From positions 1,860,001 through 1,924,000 of the forward strand of contig CM068769.1 of the NCBI GenBank assembly GCA_035084275.1: a stretch of DNA of 64,000 nt, written 5' to 3'. A program made the position numbers and the translations under genes. Below, piece by piece: positions 1,009-38,854 of this stretch. Positions within the stretch are counted from its first letter, which is position 1, and the number at the start of each line of letters is the position of its first letter. The notes under the pieces were generated by a model. It was given only the letters and a program-made list of their open reading frames with translations, searched no databases and was not told the DNA's origin. Origin of the DNA: Hydrolagus colliei (lineage: Eukaryota).

Positions 1009-1027
1009 ATAGTGCTTTTCTGTTTGC
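1009..1027 (-). CDS. Candidate cytoplasmic micro-exon of the SRCR-Ig receptor ((G)KQKST)
   Basis: 19-nt exon with ttgtatttgcag acceptor and GTAAGT donor. Enters in phase 1, in frame with the TM exon, and encodes basic juxtamembrane residues. Confidence 0.45.
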
Positions 1028-1873
1028 CTGCAAATACAAAACGTAATAAAGCTTAAAAATGATTAAGTACATGTGGGGTATTGTTGCAAGATTTGTAATG
1101 ATAATCCTTCCCTTTTCTCCAATGCCAAAACTCTTCATAAGCGATCGTTGTCAATAACACTTCACTTTAAATAGCACCCCCCACACACATACATACAGAT
1201 AGAGAGCCTGTCACCAGCTTGACAAGCAATAGAACTGGATATGTAACCCTGCAGCACAACATTTTGGATCATTGTTAGCAATTCAATCGCCTCTGTTTAT
1301 CTAATAATATCAACAACAGAAACAACTGATCAACTACATCAGTAGGTACCCAAATTAGTCGATTTAGTGCGTCCATTTCCACCGGAAAATAATCCTTAAA
1401 AACTAAAAATGATAATAACAATCGGGTCAGTCAATGCACGGCTGTTGGTGAGAAACTGCTGTGCACAATTGGCATCTGAGTGAAAAAACACACGGTCAGG
1501 TCACCTGAAATTATATCCTCTGAATGTTGTTTGAGATGTATAGCAGAAGTAGTGAGCACAATATCGAATGGAAGAATTATTTCAGTAATTAACGTAATAT
1601 TGATAATTATTACTAAAGCTGGTTTTGTGGTATTACGATGAATATTATTAGCGTCACTATTATCATTATTTTTATCAATTTTTCTTTATTATCATTAGTA
1701 TTGGTGTCATTAGTATTTCTGTGATCTTTGTTGTTGCATTGTTATCGCAGTTATCAGGTAACAATCTACGGAAATGCACTGGATGGAAACAGACAGTGGT
1801 TGACTTCAATTATGCCTCTTCCTTTAGTTCCAACAATTATACTCTAAATTCCGTGACAATAATGAACATTCAC

Positions 1874-1972
1874 CACTCTGATACACATAGAATCGAAGAA
1901 TGTTCGCTATGATCAATATCGCAGTGAGTAACCCCACTGTCAGTCCTGTTGTGTGCTTCCATGTCCAGTTTG
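1874..1972 (-). CDS. Transmembrane exon of the SRCR-Ig receptor
   Basis: 99-nt phase 1-1 exon (ttccctctctag acceptor, GTGAAT donor) encoding ANWTWKHTTGLTVGLLTAILIIANILRFYVYQS, with a hydrophobic core of about 20 aa. Confidence 0.65.
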
Positions 1973-2274
1973 CTAGAGAGGGAAATAGGCAAAGTGTTAC
2001 TTGACGATTTGAAAATCAAATGTCATAACACAAATCATCATTTTAAAGATTTCAAAGAGGTACTATCTTCTCCTGACGTCTCTGGAAGTGAAAGTGAATC
2101 AGAAATGTAAATGTGTGCTTTACATTTCTGTGTTCCAATTGAAACAGTCGCATTCGCCACCAGCCTGCCCTCATTATCAACGCGATTTTCGGAAAAAAAA
2201 CTAATACTTCTAGAGCGCTATCACGTCAGGAGTACATTGCAAGGAGCCGGAAAGTCACTGAGTCAGACCCGAGC

Positions 2275-2820
2275 TGGGGATGGGGGGAAGGTACGAATTA
2301 GGAGGTCCAGTTGTGGCAAGCGAAGAGGAGGATCTTGAGGCGGGCATTGAGGCCAGGAAGGGTGTGATTCGTTGGGATTGCGGGATGGAGTTGCAGAGAT
2401 TGGGGGCAGAGCAGCTGAAGACACGTCCACCATTGGTGGGGCGGGTGGATCGCTGAACATGGAGCAAGAGTCAGAGCTTGCTGAGAGGAGGGTGGCGGGC
2501 AGGTTGATAAGGCTGCAGAAAGGCAGGGAATTAGGATGGGGTTAGACTGTGGATTGCTTTAAATATGAGGACCAAGATAGTGAATTTGATCTTCTGGATG
2601 ATGGGGAGCCAATGGAGTCGTGAGATTTTGGAGGAGATGGGGTCTCGAAGGTTGGAGCGGTAGAGTGTACGGGCCGCAGAGTTCTGGATCATCTCCAATG
2701 ATTGGACGGAGGTTTGCGGAAGGCCGACGAACAGGGCATAGGCATAATCAAGACGGGACTGAACAACAACAACACCTTGGATTTAGACAGCGCCCTCCAC
2801 GCTGATCGGCCTCTCCAACC
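2275..2820 (-). mobile_element. L2-type LINE 3' fragment
   Basis: Reverse complement resembles the L2 RT 3' region (GGRVFSCSAPNLCNSIPQS...). Confidence 0.7.
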
Positions 2821-3050
2821 GCTTTAGTGAAGTAATCAAGTCAAGTCTGAGGATTTTATCCGCCTTGGGGGTGAGTTAGTTGCGGAGTCAGACAATTTTG
2901 CAGAGACAACTTGTTCATATGTTCATATGATCCACCGCTGTAAATGGTGTTTCTAAGAGGAGCAGCTGCAATTTATCCAAAAGGAAACATGCTATTGTGT
3001 GAGAGTTTACTCAACTCTTGTCCAGTACAGAGATTTTACTGAACTCTTAT

Positions 3051-3332
3051 CCAGTACAGAGATTCCCACTCAAGCACTCTCTGGTGATGTGAATTCCCGG
3101 CCGCTTACGTGTGGTATATTTACACCAGTAGTTTCCAGCCGTGATGCTCGATGAGGTGAATTTGGCCGTGTTGTTATTCTCTGGAGCTGGGCGTTATGCG
3201 ATAAACTCGCCGTCTCTGTAGACAAAGAATGTGCTGCCAGGATAATTCCCAGAACAGGAGATCTCAGCGATTTCTCCTTCCACAAATTCCGGGAATATCT
3301 GTTCAGGGAAATGTTGGGTTTCTGGAGCGGAT
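3051..3332 (-). pseudogene. Ig C2-type (LRC/LILR-like) exon 2 of the SRCR-Ig receptor, disrupted
   Basis: 282-nt exon. Reconstructed DPLQKPNISLNRYS/EFVEGEIAEISCSGNYPGSTFFVYRDGEFIA*RPAPENNNTAKFTSSSITAGNYWCKYTT/HVSGREFTSPESA*VGISVL. Two compensating frameshifts, stops at 3194-3196 and 3070-3072, and donor GT mutated to AT. Confidence 0.8.
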
Positions 3333-3769
3333 CTGGAATTAGAACACAGTAATGTTGATAGCACTAATAAGCGCTCTTCACCACGGATAAGGATCACATC
3401 AGAGTAAAAGTGACCATTTAGTCGTATCAAGGCCTGGATGGGAGGGATTTGGGGATTGATTGGGAAGCGTAGTATTGTTGAGATTGATTGAAAAACCCCA
3501 GCGAGTTTTTATTCACACAGAGAGAGGTGGCGCGACGGTTGTGAGATGGCTGGTGGGGTTGTGCAGCGAATCAAGTGTAACAAACAGCTCCAGACTAGTG
3601 CAGGTGAAAGGCACTACAGACTGACCCTCTATAGTGATCTACAAACGTCTCTTTATACAACACAATGCAATTACAGCCAAGCAATAAAACCGAGAACATA
3701 GGAGCAAAAGCTACACATACTGTGGAGTGAGGTGAAGTGAATCACTGTCTGAAACTCATCTGAGACACA

Positions 3770-3990
3770 GCACCAGCTCAATCTCCAATCCAAGCTCAGA
3801 CACCAACGTAAGCTCCTAACCTTCCCGAAGATCAGCTCCCAAAATCATCTCAGCCCTCAACCTAACTTCAGTTCCGCTCCCAGGTTAGCGCTACATCCAA
3901 CTCAGTCCCCACAAGCAGCCCAACATCCAACCTCAGATTATCTCAACACCCAAGATCAGCCCCCACCGCAGCTCAGTAGAACCCTACTCC
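3770..3990. repeat. Degenerate minisatellite (cagctc-containing, about 17-18 bp period)
   Basis: Repeated cagctc/aagctc units; reverse-complement type of the 6170-6450 array. Confidence 0.5.
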
Positions 3991-4083
3991 AGCTCGGCTT
4001 CGATCACCAGATAATGTGTTTACCCTGGGTTGTTGAAATTCATGGACATCCTCGAGGTAAATAGTTGTATTTTATGTACCTCG

Positions 4084-4870
4084 CAGTGTCCGACGATATA
4101 TCGATATATAGGTTATCTCCGATATAATTTTTATATCGATACACAGTTATAGATACTTCAGAAAAAAATCCATATATCGACGAAGTCGGTATATCGAAAA
4201 CAACAGAATACGCGTGCACTTAACTATATCATCAAGAATGCTCATCTCTGTACATAATGCACAGACCGAGGTGCAAGCCGCCATAATGTATTCATAGTCC
4301 TCGAATGAGATAAATAGTTATGCAAGATGTGAGGGGAAAGAGGCGGCGGGGTGGCTTGGTGGGGAGGGAGAGACGGTGGGTGGGGGGGAGAGAGAGAAGG
4401 CGCGGGTGGGTTGGTTTTGGGATAGAGTGACGGCGATGGGTTGGGAGGGAGAGAGAGACGACAGGGGTGTGTGCGTTGGGGGGTGGGAGAGAGACACGGC
4501 TGGAGCTGTGTGTGTAGAGAGAGAGGGCGCGGGGGGTGGAGAGAGATGGGGGTGAGAAATGGGGGTATGTGATAATATACAGATAGATAGCAATGTTCGG
4601 AGGCGTGAGAGAGGAGAGAGAAACAGAGACACAGACAGAAAAACACAGAGATGAAGAGAGTGAGTGCGAAAAACACACAGAGAGAGAGAGAGAGATTTAC
4701 CTCCTGCAGCGATAGGCCCTGAATGCGCGCGCTCCACCGATTGCGCGAAACGTGAGCTCGCGCGCGCATGCGCAGTACGAAAACCTCGAAAATATCGATA
4801 AATAATTATATCTCGATATGAGCCCATCGATATATTTAAATCGGAAATTTTCCATATCGACGGACCATTG
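4084..4870 (+). mobile_element. Non-autonomous DNA transposon (hAT-like MITE) with internal purine-rich minisatellite
   Basis: Imperfect terminal inverted repeats (CAGTGTCCGACGATAT ... ATATCGACGGACCATTG) and multiple subterminal CGATAT repeats. Internal block is shared with 28250-28330 and 58800-58880. No clear target-site duplication. Confidence 0.6.
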
Positions 4871-5637
4871 CTGTGGTTCAATTCGACGTTATATGCGTCA
4901 CCAAATAATAACCACTGCACTTTAATTGTAGTCCTTGGAAACAGACGATGGAGCTTCTAGTTCTCCTTCAATATGTTTGTCATTCGCATAATGCATAGAA
5001 TCTGATCAAGTTATGTACTATACTGCATAATGGTTTCTCTTAAAATGAAACTAACTAAATTCAATTTGTTCTGGAAGGAATCAATTTTTTCATATTTAAA
5101 TCTCTCCTGATGCATCCTGTTGCAACGCATCCGGACGTCTACCCATGAAATGCGCTGTATAAATGTACATTTTTTGTTGTTGTTACACAGGTTTAATTAT
5201 CTCTCAGTCAAAGAATATTTCCGTGTATTGGTTCTGAAATATATCTCGACGTAAAGTATTACCTTTTTCTTATTTTTACTGTCATGTGAGCCGTCGGTTT
5301 GAAAATATTATCTTTCCTAGCGAAGCAGAATATAAAGGTCACTTCATTGTGAGTGTTCACAAGCGAGATGGGCCAAAATCAATTCCATTGTGGGAACAAA
5401 CCTGCAGAAAGCTGTTTCACTTTATGCTTACATCACAGTGTAGATGCCTGCTTTTTATTTGATTGGAGTTTCGTCGATACAATATACAGTTAATTAATCA
5501 CGTTAATAATGTGTTGCTTCTTGTACTTTAAGACGAATGAAACACCAATTTGATATCAAAAGCAAGAATTATTCTTACTATGAGACGATAACTGTTCAAA
5601 AGCCAGATTGTGGTGTGAGAATTTACTTATCGCTTAC

Positions 5638-5919
5638 AAATGACAAAGATTCTCACTCGCTCGCTCTCTGTTGATGTGAACTTCCGGCCGTCTATGCGGG
5701 CAGTATATTTACGCGAATAATTTCTTGCCCTGGTGTTCAATGGGGTGAATGTGGCCATGAAGTTATATGGATATGGCTTTGACGTGATAAATTTGCTGTC
5801 TCTGTCTAAGGAGAATTCGCTGCCAGGATAATTTCTAGAACACAAGATCAGAGGGATATCCCCTCTTGCAATCACACGGGAATATGGCTTCATGGAATTG
5901 GTGGGTATGTGGAGCAAAT
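5638..5919 (-). CDS. Ig C2-type (LRC/LILR-like) exon 1 of the SRCR-Ig receptor
   Basis: 282-nt phase 1-1 open exon with ttaatgacag acceptor and GTAAGC donor: DLLHIPTNSMKPYSRVIARGDIPLILCSRNYPGSEFSLDRDSK...NYSRKYTARIDGRKFTSTESERVRIFVI. Second Ig Cys is replaced by Arg (NYSRKY versus NYWCKY in the paralogous exon). Confidence 0.75.
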
Positions 5920-6169
5920 CTGTCATTAAAACACAATCAATAAATTCGCTCCAACACTCCCTTTTTTCTGTGCTGTGACAGTGAGCATCGGGATCGACAG
6001 TAAGCACAGCGGCATCCTCCGAGAACAAAATGAGGCTGAGGTTCAATGGGAGGCACAAATGTGCACTCTTATTACCGGTAATCCGAGACTAGATTCGACG
6101 CTGTTTTTCTGCTGCAATTGAACACATGATTATGAATTCAGTCAAAGTTGAATTCATAGTCATTTGTGA

Positions 6170-6450
6170 GCAGGGACTCAGTGTGAGCTGGGAGTCAGTG
6201 TGTGGTGGAGAAACGGTGTGAGCTGCAGATCAGTGTGAGCTGCGGGTCATTGTGAGTTCGGGTTCAATGTGAGCTGGGTGTTATTGTGTGCTAGAGTACA
6301 ATGTGAGCTGGTGGTCAATGTTAGCTGGGGGAAGTGTGAGCTGGGGGATAGTGTGAGCTGGGGGTAATTGTGAGCTGCACTACAATGTGAGCTGGGGGTG
6401 AGCAGTGAGCAGTGAGTCAGAATGAGACCTGGTTCAGTGTGAGCTGGGAG
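6170..6450. repeat. Minisatellite, about 18-bp unit (gtgtgagctggg core)
   Basis: More than 12 visible copies of tgtgagctg. Confidence 0.85.
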
Positions 6451-6585
6451 CGAATGTCAGACTGTCGCTCATCCACCCCTCTGTTGATCCCCTATACATG
6501 GGCTCAGTACCACCACGTGTCATCAGCCCATGCCCAATGATCACCCCATACTGCTGTACTGTGATGATTAGAGAGAGGTGTATAC

Positions 6586-6897
6586 CTGAGCAGTTGAAGC
6601 CGGCGTCATATTTGTGCGATATTAAGGTTCAGTCACCCCAAGGCCCTGAGCGACATTCTCTCAGAGCAGACTCATTTCCCCTGCACTGATCATGAATCGT
6701 CACAATGGGATCCGATCCTTCCCCAAAATGTGCTGCCCTTAGCGCTGACAGAGCGACACTACAGCCCAGCTCCTTACACATCACAGCCGCGTCCTCCATA
6801 TCCCAGTCAGAGTCCTCCACTGTGCCCCATTGACTAAAGTGGTAAACCTCCACTCTCACTGCACATGGGCGGCGGCCATTCATCATCCTCACATTCC
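6586..6897 (-). pseudogene. SRCR domain exon 3, with an in-frame stop
   Basis: 312-nt phase 1-1 exon GNVRMMNGRRPCAVRVEV...WGTVEDSDWD...CKELGC...QCRGNESALRECRSGPWGD*TLISHKYDAGFNCS. TGA at 6629-6631; canonical AG/GT boundaries. Confidence 0.9.
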
Positions 6898-7769
6898 CTG
6901 TAAAATACAACACGGTATATAAACTCTTTAGCCATATTTACGTGTTTAACTTCTAGTCTTCCTGATGTGAAAAGCGCTATGCAAATGTAATTGTGTTGTT
7001 GTTACCCAGTGTACATACGAGCGTAACAAAGGGAGTGTTTGTGGGGTGAACAGTGCAACAATGTCAATAACTATGAAGTTTATAGTGACCCTTGGTAGCA
7101 CACATTCCACTGATAACGACACAAAAATCCAACCAAAACCCAGCTACTCCTCCTAGTGCATCATTATATCCAGGTACAGAAACCATAGAGCACATTCCAA
7201 CCCACCCATCGCCCCCTTTCTTCCAGTGTACATGCTCATATCGCATACACCCGCAATACATTGCCATGGGTCACAGTCTACCCCACACAGTGTACAACCA
7301 AACCGGCATGTCACAGCTTTCGTACGAACACAGACAATGCTCACTCTGCTTTCAACAAGCATAAACACCCAAAGACACAACATCAGCGAACAGCGCGCTC
7401 ATCAGGGTACGCTCTGGCCATCTGCCACGCCATTCTCCCCCGCAAGGGCACAGCAATTACCATTCCAAACAGGTCCCAGCAAATCGCAAGACGAGCCAGC
7501 ACTGTCGCAGACTCCGTCTCGTATATACAGCGTGTCACCCGCCACGGGCACAGCACACGTCCAACTGGGCACATTCCCCACATTAGTCACTGAATGTCCA
7601 CAATTCAGAGCTCACACAGGAAAAGATGACACCACACAGGTCAGAACCAGACTCCAAAGCAGATGAGCCTCCAAGAACACTCCCACACCAACCAACAAAC
7701 AGCTTCCGCTTTATTGAAAATGTCACTACCTCAACAGACACAGGCTTATCTCCACAGGTCAGAGGCCCA

Positions 7770-8165
7770 AACAAAAACAATAACGTCGATTTATATAGCG
7801 CTCAACACGCCGGACGGCCTCTCAGAACGCTTCACTGTAGCCGATCCCGGGACCGAGCCAAGGCCAGGGACAGGAAGGTGAACAAAAGCTCAGTCGAAGA
7901 GAAAGGTCTTCAACTGTGATCTGAAACTGGGAAGAGAGGGGGAGAGGCGATGCGAGTTAGGAACGGAGTTCCAGAGCCTAGGGGCATAGTGGCTAAAGGC
8001 ACGGCCGCTGAGGGTGGAGCGGAGGACTCGTAGCACATGGAGGAGGCCAGAAACAGAAGAGCGAAGGCAGTGGGTGCTGGGTTGGGGGGGAGAGGAGATC
8101 AGAGAGATATGGTGGTGCAGAGTTGTGGAGGAATTTGAAAACAAGGGTGAGGATCTTGAAGTCGA
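7770..8165 (-). mobile_element. L2-type LINE 3' fragment with tail
   Basis: SGRAFSHYAPRLWNSVP...SFRSQLKTFLF, plus a gcgctatataaat-(TTG)n tail on the minus strand. Confidence 0.8.
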
Positions 8166-8993
8166 ATCCGCTAACTAAAGCCGATACCCCTAGGTAGAGC
8201 CTCGCAATTCACTAAAACCGTAATAGTAAATCATCGCGACCAACTTGGGACAGACCAAGCACTTGTCTTCCGCCACCCACCCTTCCCCAAGGGGGAACAG
8301 CAAGATAGGGTGTGAGACAGGTAGGAAGGACGGAGTGACGTGGGAGGGCAGTAGAAGGCACGATCTTAGAGGAGGATTAACCAAACATATTCGATCACTT
8401 CAGTGCGAAGCCACACCCACTCCACTAGCAACAATCCCTGCTCCCCACCCCTTCGCCCGCTGCACCATGCACAGCTACTGAATCTTTATTCACCGCCTTC
8501 CCTCTATACATAGCCGTCCAGCCTTTAGCCACAGGGCACAGCTCCGCCCGCCACGGTAGTCGGTTCCGTACGTAACAGCCTCCAACAACACAGTCACAGG
8601 CTCAGCAGCCAAAGATCCTCCTCTACGTCACAGCCTCTCCACCCAAGGCACAAACCAGCACAGCCCCATGGTGGTTTCTGCTTCCACAACTGCCCCACCA
8701 CATGGGTTCATGCCCCAGAACACAAACACGTGTTTCAGCACACAACCCTCTACCAGTTTGTTCACCCTGCCTTTGTTCAACAACCCCTTTGTTAATCCCA
8801 ATGATCACACACTCATGCTCAGCACTCCCGGCGTTGAACCGCTCCTTGGGCGTACCCCCACTTTGCTGAATACCCACCACCACAGGTAAATTCCATACCA
8901 CTCTGCCTGCGTAGCCTACAGAAACACCATCTTACCATACCAGCCAATACCCCGTATGAAATCGAGTTGATCGTCAGAGAATGTACTATTTAC

Positions 8994-9302
8994 CTGTGCA
9001 AATGACGCTGGCATCAAAGCTGTGTGACAGTTTGTAGAGATTCCAGGTCGTTGATTTACAATCCTTCAGGGCAGACTCACTCCCTGTGCATTGAACAAAA
9101 TACGTCACAATGGGACCTGATCCTTTTCCAAAGTGAGATCCTGTTGGTGCTGAACGAGCCGCTCCACAGCCCAGCTCCATACACAACACAGCTGCGTCAT
9201 TTATATCCCAGCCGTTGTCATACATTGTGCCCCATTGTCCATTGTGGTTAATCTCCTCTCTCCCAGCACATTGACGACTGCCATCCACGAGCCTCACATT
9301 CC
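8994..9302 (-). CDS. SRCR domain exon 2 (intact)
   Basis: 309-nt phase 1-1 exon GNVRLVDGSRQCAGREEINHNGQWGTMYDNGWDINDAAVLCMELGC...DASVICT, with ttttacag acceptor and GTAAAT donor. Confidence 0.92.
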
Positions 9303-10943
9303 CTGTAAAATAACACTCAAAATCTTGAAACTTTGATGCCTTTTTACTTCTCGTCAAACTTTTTGTTTGACTTCTCGTCGGCAAATATATATGGGAGGGT
9401 ATATGTCACATTACGACGGTGATTCCATGGCAAACAATACAACAGCTATAAAAATAACTTTGATGTTTGCTTTGACTGGTGGTGAAGTACAATACGAAAT
9501 GTTTTTCAAAATGACAATGGACTTTTAATATAATTATATTATAGATGATTATGCTTAAATTGTACTTGATATTAGTTTGTTATAACATATCATATTATAA
9601 TTCACGTTAATTTGTTTTGCATTATATTGTATTATTCATCAGTATATTTTACATTGTTAGTTAATTTAATCGAATAATTAGGAAGCACATAGGCAGGCCA
9701 ATCGCCCTGATCGTATATGTGCCACCACTTGGAAAAGAGCTACGAAAATCCACACCATTCTTCCAACCCTCGCATAGCTTGTTATCCCCAAACAATTGTC
9801 TTCTTCCCTCTTCAAAGTTGTTTGTCGATTCGGACTTCCAGCAACATTTCAGGCAATGCATCCCAGATACAACCAGCTGTGTGAAAAAAACGTGTTCTCT
9901 CCTCCGCTCGTTTACTTTTAGTAACTATTTTAATTCAGTGTCCTCAGATAACTGACCATGGGGACAGTTTTTACTTGGTTTACCATATCGAACCAGCTAC
10001 TGGAATGATGCATTCTACATCGTGCTCTCCTAAACTGCTCTGGTCCAAAGAGAATATTTCCATCTTCTCTAGCATCTAACATTAAATTATTATTTGAACG
10101 CTTTCCCAGCCAAAGGACCGCAGGATACGGAACAACTCACATTCAACTTGCTATCAACCAAGCTAACAGTCTCGAACCACCACGCACGGCAACGCAATCC
10201 AGGTAAAGATTCACCCCACACCCAGCTACTCCCATGGTACACAGCAACCAACGGTAGACAAATCCTCAGCCAAACCCCCAAAACACAAACACACTCCTAT
10301 AAATTTCACAGCAACATCCCATAGGCACAGACCTTACATATCTGCAGGTCGCATCCATTCATAGAAGAACTGCCGAGGTCCCTCTTCACTACTGTACCAT
10401 GCACAACAAACCCCACGGAGAACACATCCCCAGAAGCACTAGCGGTGTTGTTATCTATTTCAGGCACAGACCACTACGAAGAGAACTTCCTGCTGCTAAG
10501 GCACAACACATCTCCGCACTGTTACCCCACATAAAGGCTGCCCAACCTCTGATCGCCGCTCCCTATCCGTGCACACACCGCACCACAGCCCCATGGTGAT
10601 TTCTACTTCCACTGCCACCCCACCTCAACTTTATCAGACCGTAGTGCTCATTCAACTGCTCTCAGCCAAAAATTGCCTCCCAACCCGCCCAATTTTCTCA
10701 CCATGCTTTGTTCAACAACTACTTTTTTATCCCAACAATAACATACTCGTGCTGATTACACCTGGTATAGAACCGCCACTTGCTCTTACCCTCAATATGC
10801 GCAATTCGTCGTGCTCATCCAGAACTGTGCTGAATACCTCCAATCCATTCGATTCATAGTGATCCTACACGCACCTACTGTATTGCCATACAGCCCGCAT
10901 TCCCTACGAGATCGAGGTGATAACCAAAGCAAGTATTACTCAC

Positions 10944-11252
10944 CTGTGCATATAACGCTGGCATGAAAGTTGTGTGACGGTGTGTGGTAACTCCGAGTCT
11001 CTGATTTACAATCCTTCAGAGCAGAAACATTTCCTCTGCACTGGAAAGGATACATCCGAATCGGACTGGATCCTGCTCCTAAGTGAGCTCCTCGTGGTGC
11101 TGAAAGCGATAAACCGCAGCCCAGCTCCTTACACACCACAGCCGCGTGCAGCAGATCCCAACCATCATCATCCACTGTGCCCCATTGTCCACTGTAGTTA
11201 AGCTCCACTCTCACAGCACATCGGCCACTGCCACCCATTAGCCTTACGTTTC
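10944..11252 (-). CDS. SRCR domain exon 1 (intact)
   Basis: 309-nt phase 1-1 exon GNVRLMGGSGRCAVRVELNYSGQWGTVDDDGWD...CKELGC...HASVICT, with ttttgcag acceptor and GTGAGT donor. Confidence 0.92.
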
Positions 11253-11429
11253 CTGCAAAATATCACACACAGCATTAACATTTTGGTTTATTTTAACTTC
11301 AAGTCACCCAATATACATGGGGGGGTGCCTGTCACAATGCTAGGTTGCTTCGTGGGTAACCATTCAAAACAAAAGCAAAGATAACTGATTTTTGCTGTGA
11401 CTGATGTGACATACAATCAAACATTGTTT

Positions 11430-11750
11430 CTAACAGCAACAACAACAAAACAAATTGATAGATCGCGTCTGAAGTCGGGAGGATGTCCCAAGTCGCTGAA
11501 CAATAATGTCGTGACTCAGGCGGTGGGGTTGGGGGAGGGGGAGTGTCGGGGAAGGGGAAGGGGAATGGGAAGGAGAGTAGGGGAGCGGGAGAGTTAGGAG
11601 GGGACCAGAAGGCACGGGCGAAGAGAAAGGTCTTAAGACAGACTTTCATGGAGGAAATAGAGAAGAGAGGCGATGGGATTGCTGGATGGAATTCCACAGT
11701 GTGGGAGGAGACAGGCTATCAGCCTGGCTACCGAATTAGAGCGGTTTGGG
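11430..11750 (-). mobile_element. L2-type LINE 3' end
   Basis: EFHPAIP...SMKVCLKTFLFARAF translation and L2-type tail. Confidence 0.65.
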
Positions 11751-11759
11751 CGTTGGACG

Positions 11760-12520
11760 TGGAGCAGGGCAGAGCCTTCCTCCCTTATTTCCGTTCCATG
11801 ACCGGTACAGCGTTGCACCACCTCCGTATTATTGCCAAACGCAGCCAGTGGCTCACCCCCACTAAACTGAACATGCATCTACACTATTGGGACTTCCAGG
11901 CTCGACTACGGGAACTCTCTACTCGTCGGCCTTCCTAGTTCCTCCCTTGATGGGCTGCACGTCATTCAGAACATTGCACCTCGTGTACTCTCCCGCACCA
12001 GGAACCACGACCATATCACTCCCAGCTTCGGACGTCTCCACTGGCTCCACTTTCCACAAAGGATTGAATTCAAGATCTTTGTCCACACTTTCGAGACCAT
12101 TGTCAGCCTTGCCGCCGCGTATCTCTCCGAACTGCTCTCTCCCTACCATCCAACCTGTACAGTCCGCTCAGCAGAATCAGACCTGCTTGGAGACCACTGC
12201 ACTAACCCCCACCCACTCCACCGTCGGTGGCCTGTCTTGCAGCCTCTCTGCTCCCATACGGTGGAACTCCATCCCGCAATCCCTTCGATTCACTTCCTCT
12301 CTTTCCTTCTTCAAGGCCCGCCTTAAGATCTTCTTCTTTGAACGTGCATCATGCACCCCTCCTAACTCTTCTATTTCTCCTGATCTCCTTCCCTCGCACT
12401 AACCCCGACCCTTCCCCACGTGCCCCGGTCGCAAACTGACAGGACAACGCTTTAGGACGTCCAGTCGACGTGAAATGCGCTCAATGAATGTAATTTTGTT
12501 GTTGTTCTTGCTGTTGTTGA
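11760..12520 (+). mobile_element. L2-type LINE 3' fragment
   Basis: Degenerate RT C-terminus (RLDY...DHITP...LHWL...RIEFK...APIRWNSIP) and a gcgctcaatgaatgtaa-(TTG)n tail. Confidence 0.85.
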
Positions 12521-12724
12521 ATGAGATGACTAATACAATGAGGGAAGGATGTTGTATCAAAACGAACGTGATAATTGTTCAATTTAAGTTTGGAAAAGGA
12601 AATCCGAGCACTATCGATTCATTCAATTAGTACTGTGCAGTATCAGTATCGCGAATTAAAAATGATATCAGTGGAAGACTAATAGTAACAACGAAATGTG
12701 ACCAGATTTTGGTTACCCTAAGCA

Positions 12725-13925
12725 TACTAGATTCATAGATACATAGAATTTTACGGCACAAAAGGAGGCCATTCGGCCCATCTATTCTGTGCCGGCTCTT
12801 TGAAAAGAGCGATTTAATCAAACTGCCCTGCCCGCTCCCCATAGCCTAATAGACCTGTTCTCCCTAAATAAAGATCTAATTCCCTTTTAAAAGTTGTTAT
12901 CGAATCAGCCTCCACCACCATTTCAGCAAATGCATTCCAGATTCGAACAACTCGCTGAGTGAAAGAAGTTCTCCTAAGCTCCCCTCTACTTCGCCATGAA
13001 ACTATTTTAAAACTGTGAACACGAGTCACAGATTCACCCACGAGTGGAAATAGGTTTTCTCTATTTGCCCTGTCGAAACCCCTCATGATCTTGTAAACCT
13101 CTATTAGGTCTCCCCTCAATCTTCTCTGCTCCAGAGAGAATAACCCTAGCCTATCTAGCCTCTAATCATAGCGGAAGACCCTCAATCCTGGCACCATTAT
13201 AGTAAATCTTCTTTGTACCCTTTCCAATGCCTTCACATCCTTTCTGTAGTGTGGTGACCAGAATTGAACACAGTATTCCAGCTGAGGCCTCACCAAAGTC
13301 CTATGAAGGTTAGTCAGCACTTCCTGACTTTTGTACTCTATACCCCTATTTATAAAGCCTAGTATCCCATAAGCCTTCTTAACAGCCTTGTCTACCTGTC
13401 CTGACACCTTCAACGAGTCACTAACACAAATCCCCAGGTCTCTCTGTTCCTTCACACCTTTTAAAATTGTACTATCTAGCCTATATTGCCTCCCTTCATT
13501 TCTTCTCCCAAAATGCATCACCTCACACTTCTCTGCATTAAACATCATCTGCCATGTTTCTGCCCACTTTACCAATTTGTCTATATCCTCTTGCAGATGG
13601 CTACGATCCTCCTCACTATTTACTATTCTCCCTAACCTAGTGTCATCTGCAAACTTGGAAACTGTACTCCGTACACCCAAGTCCAGATCATTGATGTAGA
13701 TTACAAACAGCAATGGTCCCAAAACTGATCCCAGTGGCACACCACTGCTCACTTCCCTCCAATCTGAAAAACAGCCGCTCACTACAACCCTCTGCTTTTT
13801 GTCTCGCAGCCAGTTGTGGATCCACGCTGCCACTGTCACTTTTACGGCATGGGGCTTTAATTTCATAATAAGTCTCTCATGTGGCACTTTGTCAAATGCC
13901 TTTTGAAAGTCCATGTAAACTACAT
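12725..13925 (-). mobile_element. CR1-type LINE, 3' part of the reverse transcriptase ORF
   Basis: ORF 13162-13914 has DFQKAFDKVPH, GVPLGSVLGPLLF, FADDT and LVRPQLEYCVQFWSP. It continues in 12814-13119 (RGDLIEVYKIM...FTQRVV). Confidence 0.95.
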
Positions 13926-15666
13926 GGACATGAATGCGAAATTAAAATAATGTGGCTTTACAGTCTGCAAAAAAGTTAACGAGATCAAATAGCTTAATAA
14001 AAGTTTGAGAAACACAGTGATATAAACAGAAATGACAGCAGATGGTCTGTCCAATTGGCAAAGCTGGCATGTGGCATGTGAAGCATTTGAAATGCAGAGG
14101 ATATACGAGCCAAAATGTAGGCCAAACAAATTGGAAAATGCGGCAAATTTTGATTAGATCTCCATATCAGGTGTTGAGCAACAGCTACAAACGAATGCTG
14201 TCAGTGCAACTATATGGGATTATGCAGAAATTGACAAGTAAATCAAAGGTTTTATAGCCGATCCAAATCGCAAAGCAAACCGATGGAAGACAGTAGAAGT
14301 GGTCAAATAACATGAGGGGAGCCAGAACTAGAAAACTAACCCAAGTGAATATGAAAGGGAGACACCTCCGATGTAGATTACAGTGAAAATGAACAAGAAG
14401 AGAAGTAAAACATCGAGACAAAAAAAAATCAAAAGTGAATCGGTGGTTGTGTGTGGATATTTGAGGTGTCTGGAAGCAAGGAAACTAATTTAGTGCAAGT
14501 TAGATATAGGGACACAGACCAGCATGATGGCATCTTGGGATTCTAGTTCCAGAGAATCAGAACCTAATAAGCCTGGTAAAGGTGCAAATGATTTTGTGAC
14601 AATAAGTATGATATAAGAAATACACAAATGATTAAAGATTGTTATCTAATAGTAAATTCTCGTACAATATATAATATAACATGGGTCGAGACTCAGAGTA
14701 ATACCCAATGAATTCTGCAGAAAGCTGATTTTTCCAGGTATTGTTCAGTAATATGGTCAATCTCCGTTATACTCACACAAACCAATAGTACCCTCTTTCC
14801 TTCTCTAATTCTTCGCTGGACCTGAGCCCAATTATACTATTCTCTGAAAATGACCGTTGACCTTATCTGAACTATGTCCCAAATTAGATAATGTGTCATT
14901 CTCTTTGTGCTGTCTAGAAAGTACATCTTATCTCAGGAACCTACTGGTATTGGGCTTGAATAGCTTGTTAGTGCATGCTATCCATTTTGTCCGCATTCCT
15001 ATATCGTGCATTTCAGACTTTGTGTCGGTTTTCACTTTTAATTCAGGTTCTCATTACTTTTGCTGAATACGCTTTTCAGTCTATATGAAACCTATCCTAT
15101 CCTCCTACCTACAACACATGGCAAGTATATGTAAAATTTGGAGAACCAAATAATGAAAAGATAGTGAAAGGAAAGATAAATAAATGGTGTTCATTAATGG
15201 AAAATATTAAATAGTGGTCAGAGTAGCGAAATGAGCTGTATACAAGGGAGATAATATAGAATTAGTAATGCATAGTAAACAGAAAATACAATAATTTATC
15301 GGGATTGGAACGCAGCATAAAATATATAGTGACAAACATTAGGTATGTGACAAGTCAGAGGATGTGTGAGACATTAAAGAGAGAAATGCATGTAATTTAA
15401 TGGCGACTTAGATAGAAAACGTGGCATGGAAAAAATAGGAAGACATTTGTTCAGTTATACTGAGAATTGATTTTATTGTAGCTCGAATTATAGCCAAATA
15501 GCATAAGGATATTACACAGCTGCAGGAAGCGTGATAGATAAGACTGAATAAATATTAGCCAGATAAGATGTAGGAATTAATCAGTGATAATGCGCCACAC
15601 AATTGGCGAGCACTGAATTTTTCTTAAAACAGAAAACGTTGGGTTCTAGAGTACAGTACACCTTAC

Positions 15667-15715
15667 TACATGTTCCACGAAGCTAAGGAATGGAGCAAAG
15701 AGCCTTGCAATAATA
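15667..15715 (-). pseudogene. Candidate second leader exon of the SRCR-Ig receptor
   Basis: attctgcag acceptor and GTAAGG donor. Joined to 18538-18562 it gives the signal-peptide-like MKLIFFFIVLLQGSLLHSLASWNM, but it is 49 nt, one base off phase 1-1. Confidence 0.35.
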
Positions 15716-15734
15716 CTGCAGAATTATACCAACA

Positions 15735-15950
15735 GATGACCAGTGACAAAACATAAAATACTACAGACGCTGGAAACCTGAAACAGAAACAGAAGTTACT
15801 TGTAAAACTCAGCAGGTTAGGCAGCATCCATGGAGAAAAGATAGTGAATCTACATTTCGTGTCCACCACACACATTCAGAACAGGTTGTGGTCGAAGGGA
15901 GCTGCCGATATGCTGAGTTTTCTCATCAATTTCTATTTTATTTCAGATAA
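15735..15950 (-). mobile_element. Penelope-like element 3' terminal fragment
   Basis: Reverse complement of the ggatgctgcc...ctgctga(g/c)ttt...gttt terminus seen at 32100-32190 and 62960-63040. Confidence 0.6.
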
Positions 15951-16639
15951 CCAAGGACAGACACCAACACAGATGAAGGTGTGCTGAATATGAAGAGATG
16001 GGTTAATGTGCCTGGACACAAAACTCCGACCATAGGTACAGAGATAAATATATTGGAAGATACAATGTCAATTGCAAAAGAAGGGAAAACAAACTTTAAA
16101 AAAAGGAGAGACAACTAAAAACAGAAGGATGGATCAAAGTAAAAAAGTAGGAGTATGTTACGTAAACGTAATCCTAATATCTATAACATGAACAAGAAAC
16201 ATTACGTAGACGAATATCATGAGAAATCAAACAAAATACAGCGAAGAAAATACAGGAAATAAATTAAAAGTAGGAGCAAGGTCGAGGAGTGACAGAAAGT
16301 GTAAGAAGAACGAACTGCGGGAGAGGAATCAACAATCCACAAAGAATGACAGGACGAGATTGAACAAACAGAGGATAAACTAAAATTAAGAAGGTACTGC
16401 ACATTGCTTTCAGGGCATCAGTGGGAATTGAATATGGATGCCACACTGGTGGAAGAATTTTGCTAAATGGATTAACCAGATTTGAAAGAAGCTGATTTGT
16501 ATAGTTCGAAATAAAGGATTGAGGGAATTTATATTGTGCTTTGGGTGAAATAAAATTACAATCTTACTTGCAGATTCCTCCATCCTTCTCTCCAGAAATA
16601 TCACTATACAAGAAAACAAACCAAGATCAGAACAGAGAA

Positions 16640-17085
16640 TGGAACAACAACAACAATTACAAGGATTTGTAGCGTGCTTCATGCCGAATGGCGTCTCAGA
16701 GCGCTTCTCAATAACGGATCCCGGTGCAAACCACTAGGAGAGGGAAGAAGATGACCGAAAGCGCGGTCGAAAAGAAAGGTCTTTAGCCGAGACCTGAAAA
16801 TACGAAAGGAGGGGGCGAGGCAAAGTGAACGAGGAAGGGAGTTCGAGAGCCTCGGGGTCTAGTGGCTGAAGGCACGACCGGCAATGGTGGAGCGGATAAT
16901 TCGGGCGACCAGGAAGAGGGCAGGCTCAGTGGAGCGAAAGCAACGGGTAATATTCTGAGGACGGGAGGCCAAAGTAGCAGGGGATGCAGAGGAGCGGAGG
17001 CATTCAAATACAAGCATGAGGATCTTGAAATTGTTACTCTCTGCGATAGAGAGCCAGTGCAGTCTGGCAAGAATTATGAATAAAG
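16640..17085 (-). mobile_element. L2-type LINE 3' fragment
   Basis: L2-like 3' sequence and tail. Confidence 0.7.
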
Positions 17086-17304
17086 TAATTTACACAATCA
17101 AGTAGCTGAGCTGCCTGGTTTCTCAGTACATTAAGGTCATTAACTATGGTGCAACTATCTGGGGCCAGCACCATAAAGGCTCTCGAAGGGTTGCGAAAAA
17201 TACCGTACCATAACAATGTTGAGCGAGACACTGCAACGATACGATAGGGACACCATTTGTGACTTAAAACAAATCGCATTCATAGAACCCCAACATCCAG
17301 CAAC

Positions 17305-17310
17305 ACACAC

Positions 17311-17369
<59 letters not shown>

Positions 17370-17370
17370 T
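17305..17370. repeat. (CA)n microsatellite
   Basis: Direct observation. Confidence 0.95.
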
Positions 17371-18537
17371 TGTCTGGACGGCCTTTTGCTGTGCGAGGAT
17401 TGTTTGTGCTTGTGATTCATGTCTCCCAGAAGAATAGTTTCAGTTTACAGCCACAAACCAGAAACTCCTCTCCCCATGCTGCTTTTCCCTCTCTCGGCCT
17501 CTCATGTCCCGTTACTTCTCTCCCTCGTTCTGCCTATACTCTCGGTCTTCCTCTGTGCTCTCAACTACTTCTGCATTAACTCTATCACGTCTCTCTCCTC
17601 ACTCATCTACCACTACCTCCCTCCTCTTATGGCATCCTTTCTCTCTCCTTTCCCATGTGTCTGCACGGATTATCTCTTTTCTTTGAATTCATCTTTCCAC
17701 TCCTATTTCCTCTCCCATCTTATCTTTCCTTCCCGCTCTCTCCATTCTTGGAACACGGGAACACGAATATGCAGTTCATTTATTGGAGTCTCTTCAATCG
17801 TGCGATTAGCTTGTGTGATATGCAATCTTAGCTATATCTCTACTAATCCTTTCAATTCAAATTTCTCCACATGTTCCTTAAAACCCCGAGTTATCCACCA
17901 TGTACCAATCTCATTCTTGAAGGGATAAATGGATAAAGCATTCAGTACATCTACATAGAGGGAAATCCAGCTTCCTGCAATCCCGTGAGTGAAAAACAAT
18001 ACTTCCTGCTTTCACAATTAAATGGCCTGATTCTAGTTTTAAGACTATGGCCCATTGTTGTGCAGTCGCCCTCCAGAGAAATTCCCCTCTGCTCTCCTCT
18101 CCCTGCTATTATTCTTCCTTCTCACCTCGCTATTCTGTCCTTATTCTTCTTCTCTCTCCTCTCTCTGTCAGGGACAACAACAACAATAATTACATTTTAT
18201 ACAGCGCATATAGCGGCAGATGGACGTTCCAAAGCGAAGAGTGTAGGATCTGTAGCCTAACACTAACCCTAGGGATGGTGATATAGATGGTATGGACTAG
18301 GAAACTTGTCGAGGGACTTGAGGCGTGGCATGCAGGAAGCAAGGAAGTGAGTGAGGGGGAATACGTGTGGGATGGAGTTCACAATATTGGTGCAGCTAGG
18401 CTGAAGGGGTTAATGATAGTGCGATGGATATGAAAGGTGGAATAGGTCAAGGAGCAGAATAGAGGGTTAATTAAAAGCTGTGATGAAAACAGGATTCCGA
18501 GGCGAATTTCGGATACATGATTAGAAACCACACTCAC

Positions 18538-18562
18538 CGATGAAGAAAAAGATCAGTTTCAT
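18538..18562 (-). CDS. Candidate first leader exon of the SRCR-Ig receptor (MKLIFFFI)
   Basis: ATG followed by hydrophobic codons and a strong phase-1 G/GTGAGT donor. Assignment to this gene is inferred from position and strand. Confidence 0.4.
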
Positions 18563-36640: not shown

Positions 36641-36862
36641 CAGACAGCAGTTTCACTTCACGGTACATTATGTGAAGCACTTTGACGAGTCTTACTATCA
36701 ACTAGGCGTATGGTTCACCTCTGGTGGTGGTTTCATGTCTGTGTGATAATCACTTGTGCTGTGATCCCATTCCTGTATGAAAGTCAGAGAGACAGGAATG
36801 CCAAGCCGCTACTAATCACCGTCAGTTTGTGTACGAGTCTCCAACTGGTTGCCATCACTGTG

Positions 36863-37864: not shown

Positions 37865-38854
37865 CACACATTCCACAGCTAGGCTGTTTGTTGGTAGGAT
37901 ACTTGTGTTGGTCTGAGCCATTCAGCACTGAGACGGGTGAATCTTGATCGCAATGAACTCACTTCCTAACCATGTGACGTGGATATCAGCAAGGCAGTGA
38001 TGCTAACCTGTCTCAGATGTTCCTGATGCTAGGGGGGCTGTTGGAAGCGTGAGTGTGCGTCCTTCGAGCCAATTCAGTTTGTTGAGTGGCCTGGCAGGGA
38101 AATGCGGACCCGATTTGTAGTGACTCAATATTACGTGTGAAGGCATCACAGAGGTAGGATGAGACAATGTCGTGGAGGGATTTGAAGGTGAGTGTGAAGC
38201 GTTTCAATTCAATCAGATAGGGTTTGGAAGGCATTGGTTATCGATTTGGGTCAGTGCATACACTCGCGGAATCATGTTTGTTAAAAGTGCAGCATCAAGT
38301 TAACAAACTCAAATTCAGGACGGTGTGAATGTCGCATTGCCACGAACCACGAGATAAAAGTCATCACACATTTTACGAATATTGATGGGAAAGTTATGGA
38401 GTTCAAATTGCCTATTGTGTTTGCCTACCCAATATAGAGAAAAACGTTTATGTTAAACGCACATTAAATTCATTTGCTACCGCATCATTTTTTAAATTAT
38501 TATTGACTATAATAAGTAGTATTTTTATGATCATTATTATCTCTAACTTGAACATCGCTGCAGAAAACTCAAGGTTTATCAATACAGTATTAGTATTGGC
38601 AATAGTATTATTCATATCGTTATCCTGCTCTATTTGGAATTTGATACAATGCAATAAGCATTTGGTCACCTTTCTCACCCTGCTCCAGGCTCGTGCTCGG
38701 GATCCGTTATTGTGAAGCTCTCTGAGACGCCGTCCGTCGTGAGGGCGCTATATTAATCGAATTTGTTGTTATTACCTGTTGCAGCTGCCAAGGAAATTAC
38801 TTGTGGACAGCGACGTTGGCAAATTGCATCAGTTGTAGTTGACGTATCATTAGT

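What the first reader, a model, noticed from the sequence alone, without database searches (positions are those of the whole stretch)
1009..18562. SRCR x3 - LRC-like Ig x2 - TM hybrid receptor next to the TCR alpha/delta V cluster
Seen: same-strand phase 1-1 exons in the order leader(s), SRCR, SRCR, SRCR, IgC2, IgC2, TM, cytoplasmic micro-exon. Known: group B SRCR receptors (CD163, WC1, SCART, CD5/CD6) act on T cells, with WC1 as a gamma-delta co-receptor, while Ig domains with KP-x-IS, F-x-x-Y-R/K-x-G and G-x-Y-x-C-x-Y belong to LRC receptors (LILR, GPVI, NKp46). In mammals these are separate families on different chromosomes. Inference: this is a chimeric immune receptor family sitting at an antigen-receptor locus. 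I do not recall a described vertebrate receptor with this architecture, but I could not search.
Basis: partly seen in the sequence, partly recalled or inferred. Interest (0 to 1): 0.82.

Follow-up and report, generated by a model that had tools for sequence, protein, structure and literature searches.

The report
Broken SRCR–Ig hybrid receptor gene
This is a damaged copy of a fish immune-receptor gene family that joins scavenger-receptor (SRCR) domains to LILR/KIR-like Ig domains; it lies beside T-cell-receptor V segments, and intact relatives exist in chimaeras, sharks, rays and bony fish, but I found no paper describing the family.

Summary
The exons are real. On the minus strand, from 18562 to 1009, lie two leader exons (25 nt and 36 nt), three SRCR exons, two Ig exons, a TM exon and a 19-nt cytoplasmic micro-exon. 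All domain exons are phase 1-1, and every splice site is canonical except the Ig2 donor. This order matches, exon for exon, an intact Callorhinchus milii gene (XP_042201732.1): SRCR x3, Ig x2, TM and an ITIM tail.

At least 72 retrieved proteins combine SRCR with this Ig type. They come from chimaera, sharks, rays and teleosts. The Ig domains are closest to PIR-B, LILR, KIR, OSCAR and NKp46. Family members carry a 36-bp second leader exon, ITIM tails or NxxR transmembrane segments.

The window's own copy is decayed:
- SRCR3 has an in-frame TGA.
- Ig2 has two frameshifts, two stops and a GT-to-AT donor.
- Ig1 has lost its second cysteine.

It is most likely a pseudogene. Seven germline V segments, TCR alpha/delta-like with 23-bp-spacer RSS, lie 18-33 kb upstream on the same strand.

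Mouse FCRLS is a partial precedent (Ig plus SRCR, soluble). Ten literature searches found no description of this family.

The parts
18538..18562 (-). Leader exon 1: ATG plus 7 codons plus 1 nt (MKLIFFFI), donor GTGAGT
   Evidence: Read. It has the same 25-nt structure as exon 1 of the intact C. milii gene in L001.
16568..16603 (-). Leader exon 2, 36 bp (VIFLERRMEESA), phase 1-1
   Evidence: blastn-short match to exon 2 of the L001 gene, 27 nt at 89%, E = 0.006. Sequence and splice sites read. The paralogous genes in L001 and L003 also have a 36-bp exon 2.
12817..13941 (-). LINE reverse-transcriptase fragment inside the intron between leader exon 2 and SRCR1 (an insertion, not part of the gene product)
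   Evidence: Stop-free segments. Pfam RVT_1, E = 1.7e-22.
10944..11252 (-). SRCR exon 1: open reading frame, six-Cys variant (keeps C1-C4, C3-C8 and C5-C6; lacks C2-C7)
   Evidence: Pfam SRCR, E = 6.7e-23. Splice sites read.
8994..9302 (-). SRCR exon 2: open reading frame, same six-Cys variant
   Evidence: Pfam SRCR, E = 3.1e-25. Splice sites read.
6586..6897 (-). SRCR exon 3: splice sites intact, but an in-frame TGA at 6631-6629
   Evidence: Pfam SRCR, E = 5.5e-21 for the part before the stop. Stop read. Homology continues after the stop (SHKYDAGFNCSG).
5638..5919 (-). Ig exon 1: open reading frame with intact splice sites. The second canonical Cys codon is CGT (Arg) at 5713-5711, and there is a 3-nt in-frame deletion relative to the paralog.
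   Evidence: 57-60% identical to Ig domains of C. milii family proteins, E about 1e-25.
3051..3332 (-). Ig exon 2, a pseudo-exon: 1-nt deletion near 3290, 2-nt deletion near 3113, TAA at 3196-3194 (homologous frame), TGA at 3072-3070 (actual frame), donor AT instead of GT at 3050-3049
   Evidence: Three-frame reading. Nucleotide alignment to two intact Ig exons of L001. The pieces are about 78% identical to family Ig domains.
1874..1972 (-). Transmembrane exon, 99 nt (ANWTWKHTTGLTVGLLTAILIIANILRFYVYQSG). It has no NxxR motif and resembles the long-tailed (ITIM) paralogs.
   Evidence: Same 99-nt exon in L001. 50-59% identical to family TM segments.
1009..1027 (-). Cytoplasmic micro-exon, 19 nt (G-KQKST), donor GTAAGT. 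It corresponds to the 28-nt KQKSSSGER exon of the paralogs. Further tail exons were not found in 1-1008 and probably lie beyond the window edge.
36815..51369 (-). Cluster of seven germline V gene segments (context, not part of the gene). They are on the same strand and upstream of the receptor gene. Six were checked and have 23-bp-spacer RSS.
   Evidence: Regex and ORFs. RSS read. Pfam V-set, E = 1e-10 to 4e-13, for five of them. The best single-domain PDB matches for two of them are TCR V-delta1 and V-alpha chains.

Best explanation
The region holds one member of a multigene family of type I membrane receptors, probably in Callorhinchus milii or a close holocephalan relative. In this family, N-terminal group-B-like SRCR domains (a six-cysteine variant) are spliced directly onto LILR/KIR/PIR-type C2 Ig domains, a transmembrane segment and a cytoplasmic tail.

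Intact members come in two forms.
- Inhibitory form: a long tail with VTYATV and IIYANL ITIMs plus a terminal P[IV]YATV motif. It would presumably recruit SHP-1, SHP-2 or SHIP.
- Presumptive activating form: a short tail and an NxxR motif in the TM. By analogy with LRC receptors it would pair with an FcR-gamma-like adaptor.

The SRCR head is the likely ligand-binding or pattern-recognition part. The Ig domains would act as a stalk or second binding module.

The copy in this window derives from the long-tailed (inhibitory) lineage, judged from its TM and its KQKS micro-exon. It has decayed. SRCR3 carries a premature TGA with intact splice sites, so its inclusion would truncate the protein or trigger nonsense-mediated decay. 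Ig2 is scrambled by two frameshifts, holds stops and has lost its donor. Ig1 has lost the disulfide cysteine. It is therefore most likely a non-functional pseudogene embedded in the TCR alpha/delta V-segment cluster.

Shown here: the exon anatomy, the domain identities, the lesions, the existence and architecture of the family, the motifs in paralogs and the V-segment neighbours. Inferred: signalling mode, ligand binding, loss of function and species.
For: - Exon anatomy, phases and lesions.
- SRCR identity: (E = 1e-21 to 1e-25).
- The Ig profile finds 269 proteins at E <= 1e-3. The top hits are all C. milii.
- XP_042201732.1 (P0274) has SRCR x3, Ig x2, TM and ITIMs. Its gene has the same exon plan: 25-nt L1, 36-nt L2, one exon per domain, a 99-nt TM exon and a micro-exon.
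- Pfam confirms SRCR plus Ig_2, Ig_3 and ig above threshold in intact paralogs.
- 72 retrieved proteins have both SRCR and this Ig type, and most have a C-terminal TM. They come from chimaera, sharks, rays and teleosts.
- The Ig profile against PDB gives PIR-B 1.4e-46, LILRB2 3.7e-29, LILRA6, LILRB1, LILRB3, OSCAR, NKp46 and KIR3DL1.
- NxxR TM motifs occur in P0144 and P0285 (NVAR) and in P0282 (NTMR). NxxR is described as the LRC activating-TM motif in PMC6557307.
- No leader-like exon lies between SRCR3 and Ig1, which are about 670 nt apart.
- No annotated protein matches the window's own SRCR exons above 55% identity. This is consistent with an unannotated or pseudogene locus.
Against: - Every domain exon is phase 1-1, so skipping SRCR3 and Ig2 would keep the frame. 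A shorter product (SRCR x2, Ig1, TM) cannot be excluded without RNA data.
- The paralogous gene in L001 also holds an Ig-like exon that is not used in P0274. Pseudo-exons therefore coexist with function in this family.
- The first Ig2 frameshift lies in a short C run and could be an assembly error.
- The tail exons, and so the ITIMs, of this copy were not found in the window.
- The species of origin was not proven. The V-segment protein search returned nothing.
- Signalling and ligand binding are inferred from motifs only.
- Most family members are computer-predicted proteins.
Confidence: 0.72

Rival explanations
1. The locus is still a working gene. SRCR3 and Ig2 are pseudo-exons that are skipped, as KIR2DL genes skip their pseudo-exon 3. 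The product would be leader, SRCR1, SRCR2, Ig1, TM and tail.
For: - All domain exons are phase 1-1, so skipping keeps the frame.
- The Ig2 donor is destroyed, which favours skipping.
- L1, L2, SRCR1, SRCR2, Ig1, TM and the micro-exon are all open with good splice sites.
- An unused Ig-like exon exists in the intact paralog gene.
Against: - SRCR3 keeps a strong acceptor and donor, so it should be included and bring in the TGA.
- Ig1 has lost the conserved second Cys, which is invariant in 32 of 32 family Ig domains.
- No annotated protein from this locus was found.
Confidence: 0.2
2. There are two separate genes or gene fragments that merely lie side by side: an SRCR-only gene fragment and an Ig-TM (LRC-like) gene. 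The database 'hybrids' would then be gene-model fusions.
For: - Most family proteins are automatic predictions.
- One model (P0284: SRCR, Ig, PRY/SPRY) looks like a possible fusion.
- SRCR-only and Ig-only relatives also exist in C. milii.
Against: - There is only one leader pair, and it lies upstream of SRCR1. No leader-like exon lies in the roughly 670-nt SRCR3-Ig1 intron.
- The same SRCR-to-Ig order occurs in more than 70 proteins from more than 12 species and from different annotation sources (NCBI, Ensembl/UniProt, EukProt).
- UniProt V9KHJ3 has a signal peptide, then SRCR, Ig x4 and TM. To my knowledge, not verified here, that accession series is transcript-derived.
- Exon phases are compatible throughout.
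Confidence: 0.04
3. The apparent lesions are assembly or sequencing errors, and the gene is intact in the animal.
For: The 1-nt deletion in Ig2 lies in a C run, which is a typical long-read error.
Against: At least seven independent lesions are of different kinds: three stop substitutions, a 2-nt deletion outside any homopolymer, a donor GT-to-AT change and a Cys-to-Arg change. No gaps or N are nearby.
Confidence: 0.03

Closest known systems
LRC paired Ig-like receptors (LILR/PIR, KIR, OSCAR, NKp46, GPVI, FcalphaRI; chicken CHIR)
   Same: - The C2-type Ig domains are most similar to these by profile search.
- One exon per domain, phase 1-1.
- Split signal peptide with a 36-bp second exon. That this is an LRC hallmark is my own knowledge.
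- Family members carry either ITIM tails or NxxR TM segments (PMC6557307).
   Different: - LRC receptors have Ig-only ectodomains; here one to several SRCR domains sit on top.
- The neighbours here are TCR V segments, and none of the genes that frame the LRC is in the window.
- FCRL5 also scores high, so LRC versus FCRL cannot be separated on sequence alone.
Group B SRCR receptors of the CD163/WC1/SCART family (also CD5L, DMBT1)
   Same: - SRCR domains are each encoded by one exon.
- The C1-C4 pair typical of group B is present.
- The best solved-structure matches are CD163, CD5L, CD6 and DMBT1.
- Both are type I membrane proteins of the immune system.
   Different: - The domains here lack the C2-C7 cysteine pair (six Cys).
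- The ectodomain continues with Ig domains.
- The paralogs' tails are LRC-like ITIM tails, not WC1- or CD163-type tails.
[quoted passage not shown]
   Same: [quoted passage not shown] PMC7940838 calls it 'unique', and PMC4016189 also describes it. It shows that exon shuffling between these two families does happen.
   Different: - FCRLS is soluble and has no TM.
- Its domain order is Ig first, then a single C-terminal SRCR.
- Its Ig domains are FCRL-type.
- The FCR/FCRL family has a 21-bp second leader exon (PMC7940838, PMC2413239), not 36 bp.
Teleost leukocyte immune-type receptors (LITR) and other fish paired Ig receptors
   Same: They are polygenic, paired (ITIM or charged-TM) Ig-type receptors of fish with distant LRC/FcR affinities.
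   Different: As far as I know, the described LITRs have Ig-only ectodomains, and a search for papers mentioning both SRCR and LITR found none linking them. Some teleost 'IGSF1-like' predicted proteins found here do carry SRCR domains, but they are uncharacterised.

Membership tests
SRCR-Ig-TM receptor family of Callorhinchus milii (predicted proteins such as XP_042201732.1; no published name found) | Collinear exon plan: 25-nt L1, 36-nt L2, SRCR exons, Ig exons, 99-nt TM exon and a KQKS micro-exon, with all domain exons phase 1-1 | tested here: met
   Window exons compared with the L001 gene map and the L003 map.
SRCR-Ig-TM receptor family of Callorhinchus milii (predicted proteins such as XP_042201732.1; no published name found) | Sequence similarity of every exon to family members | tested here: met
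   SRCR 52-66%, Ig1 57-60%, Ig2 pieces about 78% and TM 50-59% identity. Nucleotide identity is 68-79% over exons only.
SRCR-Ig-TM receptor family of Callorhinchus milii (predicted proteins such as XP_042201732.1; no published name found) | Uninterrupted reading frame (a functional member) | tested here: not met
   TGA in SRCR3. Ig2 has two frameshifts, TAA, TGA and a lost donor. Ig1 has Cys changed to Arg.
Leukocyte receptor complex (LRC) Ig-like receptors | LRC-type C2 Ig domains | tested here: met
   Family Ig profile against PDB: PIR-B 1.4e-46, LILRB2 3.7e-29, LILRA6, LILRB1, LILRB3, OSCAR, NKp46 and KIR3DL1. The single-sequence search gave the same ranking. FCRL5 also scores 1.7e-40, so LRC versus FCRL is not resolved.
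Leukocyte receptor complex (LRC) Ig-like receptors | Split signal peptide with a 36-bp second exon (FCR/FCRL genes have 21 bp) | tested here: met
   36 bp in the window, in L001 and in L003. The 21-bp rule for FCR/FCRL comes from PMC7940838 and PMC2413239. The 36-bp rule for LRC genes is my own knowledge; I could not confirm it in the papers held.
Leukocyte receptor complex (LRC) Ig-like receptors | ITIM-bearing tail or NxxR-motif TM | tested here: inconclusive
   Met in paralogs: VTYATV and IIYANL, NVAR and NTMR. In the window's copy the TM has no NxxR, and the tail exons were not found within the window.
Leukocyte receptor complex (LRC) Ig-like receptors | Ig-only ectodomain | tested here: not met
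   Three SRCR exons precede the Ig exons.
Leukocyte receptor complex (LRC) Ig-like receptors | Conserved synteny with LRC framing genes | tested here: not met
   The only recognisable neighbours in 64 kb are TCR-like V segments and repeats. The wider chromosome context cannot be tested here.
Group B SRCR receptors (CD163/WC1/SCART) | SRCR domains each on one exon, with the group B C1-C4 pair | tested here: met
   C1 (RC.VRVE) and C4 (LGC) are present in all three domains.
Group B SRCR receptors (CD163/WC1/SCART) | Full eight-cysteine pattern and an SRCR-only ectodomain | tested here: not met
   C2 (WGTV-C) and C7 are replaced in all three domains and in the N-terminal domains of the paralogs. 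Ig exons follow the SRCR exons.
FCRLS | Ig domains followed by one C-terminal SRCR, no TM, 21-bp second leader exon | tested here: not met
   The order is reversed, a TM exon is present and L2 is 36 bp (PMC7940838).
TCR alpha/delta V gene segments (the neighbours) | V-set exon ending in YxC, followed by a heptamer, 23-bp spacer and nonamer; best similarity to V-alpha or V-delta | tested here: met
   Pfam V-set. RSS read. PDB best single-domain hits are V-delta1 and V-alpha. The chain type rests on similarity only; no J or C segment is in the window.

The most novel reading that the evidence does not exclude
SRCR-headed, LRC-type paired receptors (ITIM or NxxR forms) are an ancient gnathostome family that predates the split between cartilaginous and bony fish. 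They would be the oldest recognisable relatives of LILR, KIR and PIR. In holocephalans they are physically interspersed with TCR alpha/delta V segments and act on T cells as pattern-recognising co-receptors, in the manner of WC1 and SCART.
Probability: 0.12. Interest if true: 0.85.

Novelty: new variant of a known kind. Interest (0 to 1): 0.6.

Why it matters
Published surveys state that no LRC or FcR-like homologues could be found in cartilaginous fish (PMC4016189). They also call mouse FCRLS 'unique' as an Ig/SRCR chimera (PMC7940838).

The evidence here points the other way. Chimaeras, sharks and rays have a sizeable family whose Ig domains, 36-bp leader exon, ITIM tails and NxxR transmembrane motifs all resemble LRC receptors. 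These features are fused to SRCR domains, and similar mosaics exist in teleosts.

This makes the origin of paired Ig-like receptors, and the question of what their ancestral ligand-binding module was, directly testable with existing genomes and RNA-seq. At least two family members sit among TCR V segments, which raises an untested idea of co-regulation with, or use by, T cells.

The window's own copy adds little beyond being the pointer to the family. It is probably dead.

Tried and rejected
- Pfam and PDB searches of the window's Ig pieces alone gave nothing. The pieces are too short or too degraded, so a profile of the pieces kept as separate rows was used instead.
- The first alignment of the pieces (A1) misplaced one piece and was discarded.
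- The SRCR-based homologue search was dominated by SRCR-only proteins and capped by length, so it did not reveal the hybrids.
- A search for more copies of SRCR, Ig or TM exons elsewhere in the window found none.
- A search for the ITIM tail exons in 1-1008 gave only chance-level matches. One example is EALYSNL at 942-889, E = 0.66, with no acceptor. I do not claim it.
- A strict RSS regular expression found nothing. Reading the sequence downstream of each V showed the RSS.
- Species confirmation through a V-segment protein search returned no candidates.
- The window does not overlap any of the four fetched loci. It shares only interspersed repeats with them, at up to 85% identity.
- V segments were looked for next to other family genes. 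They were found only in L001, not in L002, L003 or the catshark locus L004.
- I could not find a paper stating the 36-bp LRC leader-exon rule.
- I considered calling the family FCRL-like. I rejected this because the leader exon is 36 bp rather than 21 bp and LRC proteins dominate the profile hits.

Full report
**1. What is in the sequence**

The window has no N. All exons of the finding lie on the minus strand. Reading the three frames with their splice sites gives these exons:
- L1, 18562-18538: ATG plus 7 codons plus 1 nt, MKLIFFFI, donor GTGAGT.
- L2, 16603-16568: 36 nt, VIFLERRMEESA.
- SRCR1, 11252-10944.
- SRCR2, 9302-8994.
- SRCR3, 6897-6586.
- Ig1, 5919-5638.
- Ig2, 3332-3051.
- TM, 1972-1874: ANWTWKHTTGLTVGLLTAILIIANILRFYVYQSG.
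- Micro-exon, 1027-1009: 19 nt, G-KQKST.

Every domain exon is a multiple of 3 nt and phase 1-1. A LINE reverse-transcriptase fragment sits in the L2-SRCR1 intron (12817-13941; Pfam RVT_1, E = 1.7e-22).

**2. Domain identities**

The three SRCR exons hit Pfam SRCR at E = 6.7e-23, 3.1e-25 and 5.5e-21. Their closest solved relatives are CD163, CD5L, CD6 and DMBT1. All three keep the group B C1-C4 pair but lack the C2-C7 pair (direct reading). The N-terminal SRCR domains of the chondrichthyan relatives show the same pattern.

The Ig exons gave no Pfam or PDB hit as isolated pieces. They are paralogous to each other (47% over 59 aa, E = 1.75e-10). No further copies of any of these exons occur elsewhere in the window.

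**3. This copy is damaged**

- SRCR3 has an in-frame TGA at 6631-6629. Homology continues after it, and both splice sites are intact.
- Alignment of Ig2 to two intact Ig exons of a paralogous gene shows five lesions:
  - a 1-nt deletion near 3290;
  - a 2-nt deletion near 3113;
  - a TAA at 3196-3194, in the homologous frame;
  - a TGA at 3072-3070, in the actual reading frame;
  - a donor that reads AT instead of GT.
- Ig1 is open, but its second structural cysteine codon reads CGT (5713-5711). That cysteine is invariant in 32 of 32 family Ig domains.
- Because the tools take no protein read through a stop, all searches used the pieces separately.

**4. Are SRCR and Ig really one gene type?**

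I built a profile from Ig1 and three Ig2 pieces, kept as separate rows (A2), and searched 1.84 billion representative proteins. It found 269 proteins at E <= 1e-3 and 133 at E <= 1e-10. The best hits are all Callorhinchus milii, and many carry SRCR domains.

- XP_042201732.1 (P0274, 616 aa) has leader, SRCR x3, Ig x2, TM (ANWTWKHITGL...) and a tail with VTYATV, IIYANL and PIYATV.
- P0122 has SRCR, Ig x4, TM and an ITIM tail.
- UniProt V9KHJ3 (P0276) has a signal peptide, SRCR, Ig x4 and TM.
- Pfam confirms SRCR plus Ig_2, Ig_3 and ig above threshold in these proteins.

I fetched the P0274 gene (L001, scaffold MU249905.1) and mapped it. Its plan is the same as the window's: 25-nt L1, 36-nt L2, one exon per domain, a 99-nt TM exon, a KQKS micro-exon and then three more tail exons. 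A third family gene (L003) again has the 36-bp L2.

In the window, no leader-like exon lies between SRCR3 and Ig1, which are about 670 nt apart. The two-gene reading is therefore very unlikely.

**5. How wide is the family?**

Of the proteins retrieved, 72 contain both SRCR and this Ig type. They often alternate (for example S-I-I-S-I-I...), and most end in a TM segment. Named sources:
- Chimaera: C. milii.
- Rays: Narcine bancroftii, Pristis pectinata.
- Sharks: Scyliorhinus canicula and S. torazame, Heptranchias perlo, Cetorhinus maximus.
- Teleosts: Sardina, Engraulis, Epinephelus, Leuresthes, Salminus, Chanodichthys, Prochilodus.

All carry automatic names such as 'IGSF1-like', 'A1BG-like', 'DMBT1-like' or 'uncharacterized'.

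**6. Affinity of the Ig domains**

A profile of 32 family Ig domains (A3) was searched against PDB sequences. The ranking was PIR-B (1.4e-46), FCRL5 (1.7e-40), LILRB2, LILRA6, LILRB1, LILRB3, then LILRB4, OSCAR, NKp46 and KIR3DL1. Classical Fc receptors are not in the top 60.

Further LRC-like traits:
- The 36-bp second leader exon. FCR/FCRL genes have 21 bp (PMC7940838, PMC2413239). That LRC genes have 36 bp is my own knowledge and is not confirmed in the papers held.
- ITIM tails.
- NxxR motifs in the TM of short-tailed members: NVAR in P0144 and P0285, NTMR in P0282. NxxR is cited as the LRC activating-TM motif in PMC6557307.

The family therefore looks like paired inhibitory and activating receptors of LRC type with SRCR heads. 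The window's TM and micro-exon resemble the long-tailed, ITIM-bearing form. Its own tail exons were not found in the last 1 kb and probably lie beyond the window edge.

**7. Context**

Seven germline V segments lie on the same strand at 36.8-51.4 kb. Five were run through Pfam and are V-set. The six whose downstream sequence I read have a heptamer, 23-bp spacer and nonamer RSS. For the two searched, the best single-domain PDB matches are V-delta1 and V-alpha.

The paralogous gene in L001 also has a V pseudogene and a V fragment 1-2.4 kb beyond its 3' end. Linkage of this family with TCR V segments is thus seen twice. It was not seen within 10 kb of the genes in L002, L003 or the catshark locus L004.

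**8. Species**

The window does not overlap the fetched C. milii scaffolds. It shares only interspersed repeats with them, at up to 85% identity. Its exons are as divergent from C. milii family members (50-78% aa) as those members are from each other. A holocephalan origin, probably C. milii, is likely but not proven (one search returned nothing).

**9. Mechanism**

Shown: the anatomy, the lesions, the family and the motifs.

Inferred: intact members are type I receptors whose SRCR domains bind ligand. Long-tailed forms would signal through ITIMs and SHP phosphatases, and NxxR forms through an FcR-gamma-like adaptor. The window's copy most likely makes no functional protein. A frame-preserving product that skips SRCR3 and Ig2 remains possible (about 20%).

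**10. Literature**

[quoted passage not shown] A 2014 survey reported no LRC or FcRL homologues in sharks (PMC4016189). Ten full-text searches found no description of an SRCR-Ig-TM family in fish. The library lacks most subscription journals, so a prior description cannot be excluded.

**11. Verdict**

I rate the novelty as a new variant of a known kind and the interest as 0.6.

Noticed in passing
window 36815-51369 (minus strand): Seven germline V segments. V exons end near 36889, 39486, 42462, 44290, 46856, 48831 and about 51000. Six were checked and have a heptamer, 23-bp spacer and nonamer. Two (42.4-42.8 kb and 48.7-49.1 kb) are close duplicates of each other, including their RSS spacers. 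The RSS of the seventh (50914-51369) and the leader exons were not examined.
   Followed up: partly
L001 29908-31213 (C. milii scaffold MU249905.1): A V segment with an in-frame stop just before the YxC motif, plus a truncated V fragment 63% identical to the window's V at 36.8 kb. Both lie on the opposite strand, 1-2.4 kb beyond the 3' end of the intact SRCR-Ig gene. A second family member is therefore also embedded among TCR-like V segments.
   Followed up: partly
L001 21933-22233: An extra Ig-like exon lies between the two Ig exons used in XP_042201732.1 and is not part of that protein. Unused or pseudo-exons seem common in this family.
   Followed up: no
protein P0284 (C. milii, named 'TRIM17-like'): A predicted protein with SRCR, Ig x2 and PRY/SPRY (B30.2) domains and no obvious TM. 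It is either a gene-model fusion or a butyrophilin-like variant of the family.
   Followed up: no
proteins P0125 (Narcine, 2368 aa) and P0130 (Pristis, 3218 aa): Giant predicted membrane proteins with up to about 18-22 of these Ig domains interleaved with 5-6 SRCR domains. They may be real mega-receptors or merged tandem genes.
   Followed up: no
window 12817-13941 (minus strand): A LINE reverse-transcriptase fragment (Pfam RVT_1, E = 1.7e-22) inserted in the intron between leader exon 2 and SRCR1.
   Followed up: yes
window 2534-2782, 7893-8174, 11922-12167, 16862-17089 (minus strand); 40051-40722 (plus strand): Several copies of an interspersed repeat whose translation holds a conserved '...SRLDY.N.LL...LQ.(I/V)QNSAAR...' stretch. 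It has no Pfam hit. Copies lie in at least four introns of the receptor gene and among the V segments.
   Followed up: partly
window 6179-6399 and 58374-58763: A minisatellite (84-nt period, 2.6 copies) lies in the short SRCR3-Ig1 intron. A C/T-rich array with a 27-30-nt period (about 13 copies) lies near 58.5 kb. A (TG)n microsatellite lies near 17.2-17.4 kb.
   Followed up: no
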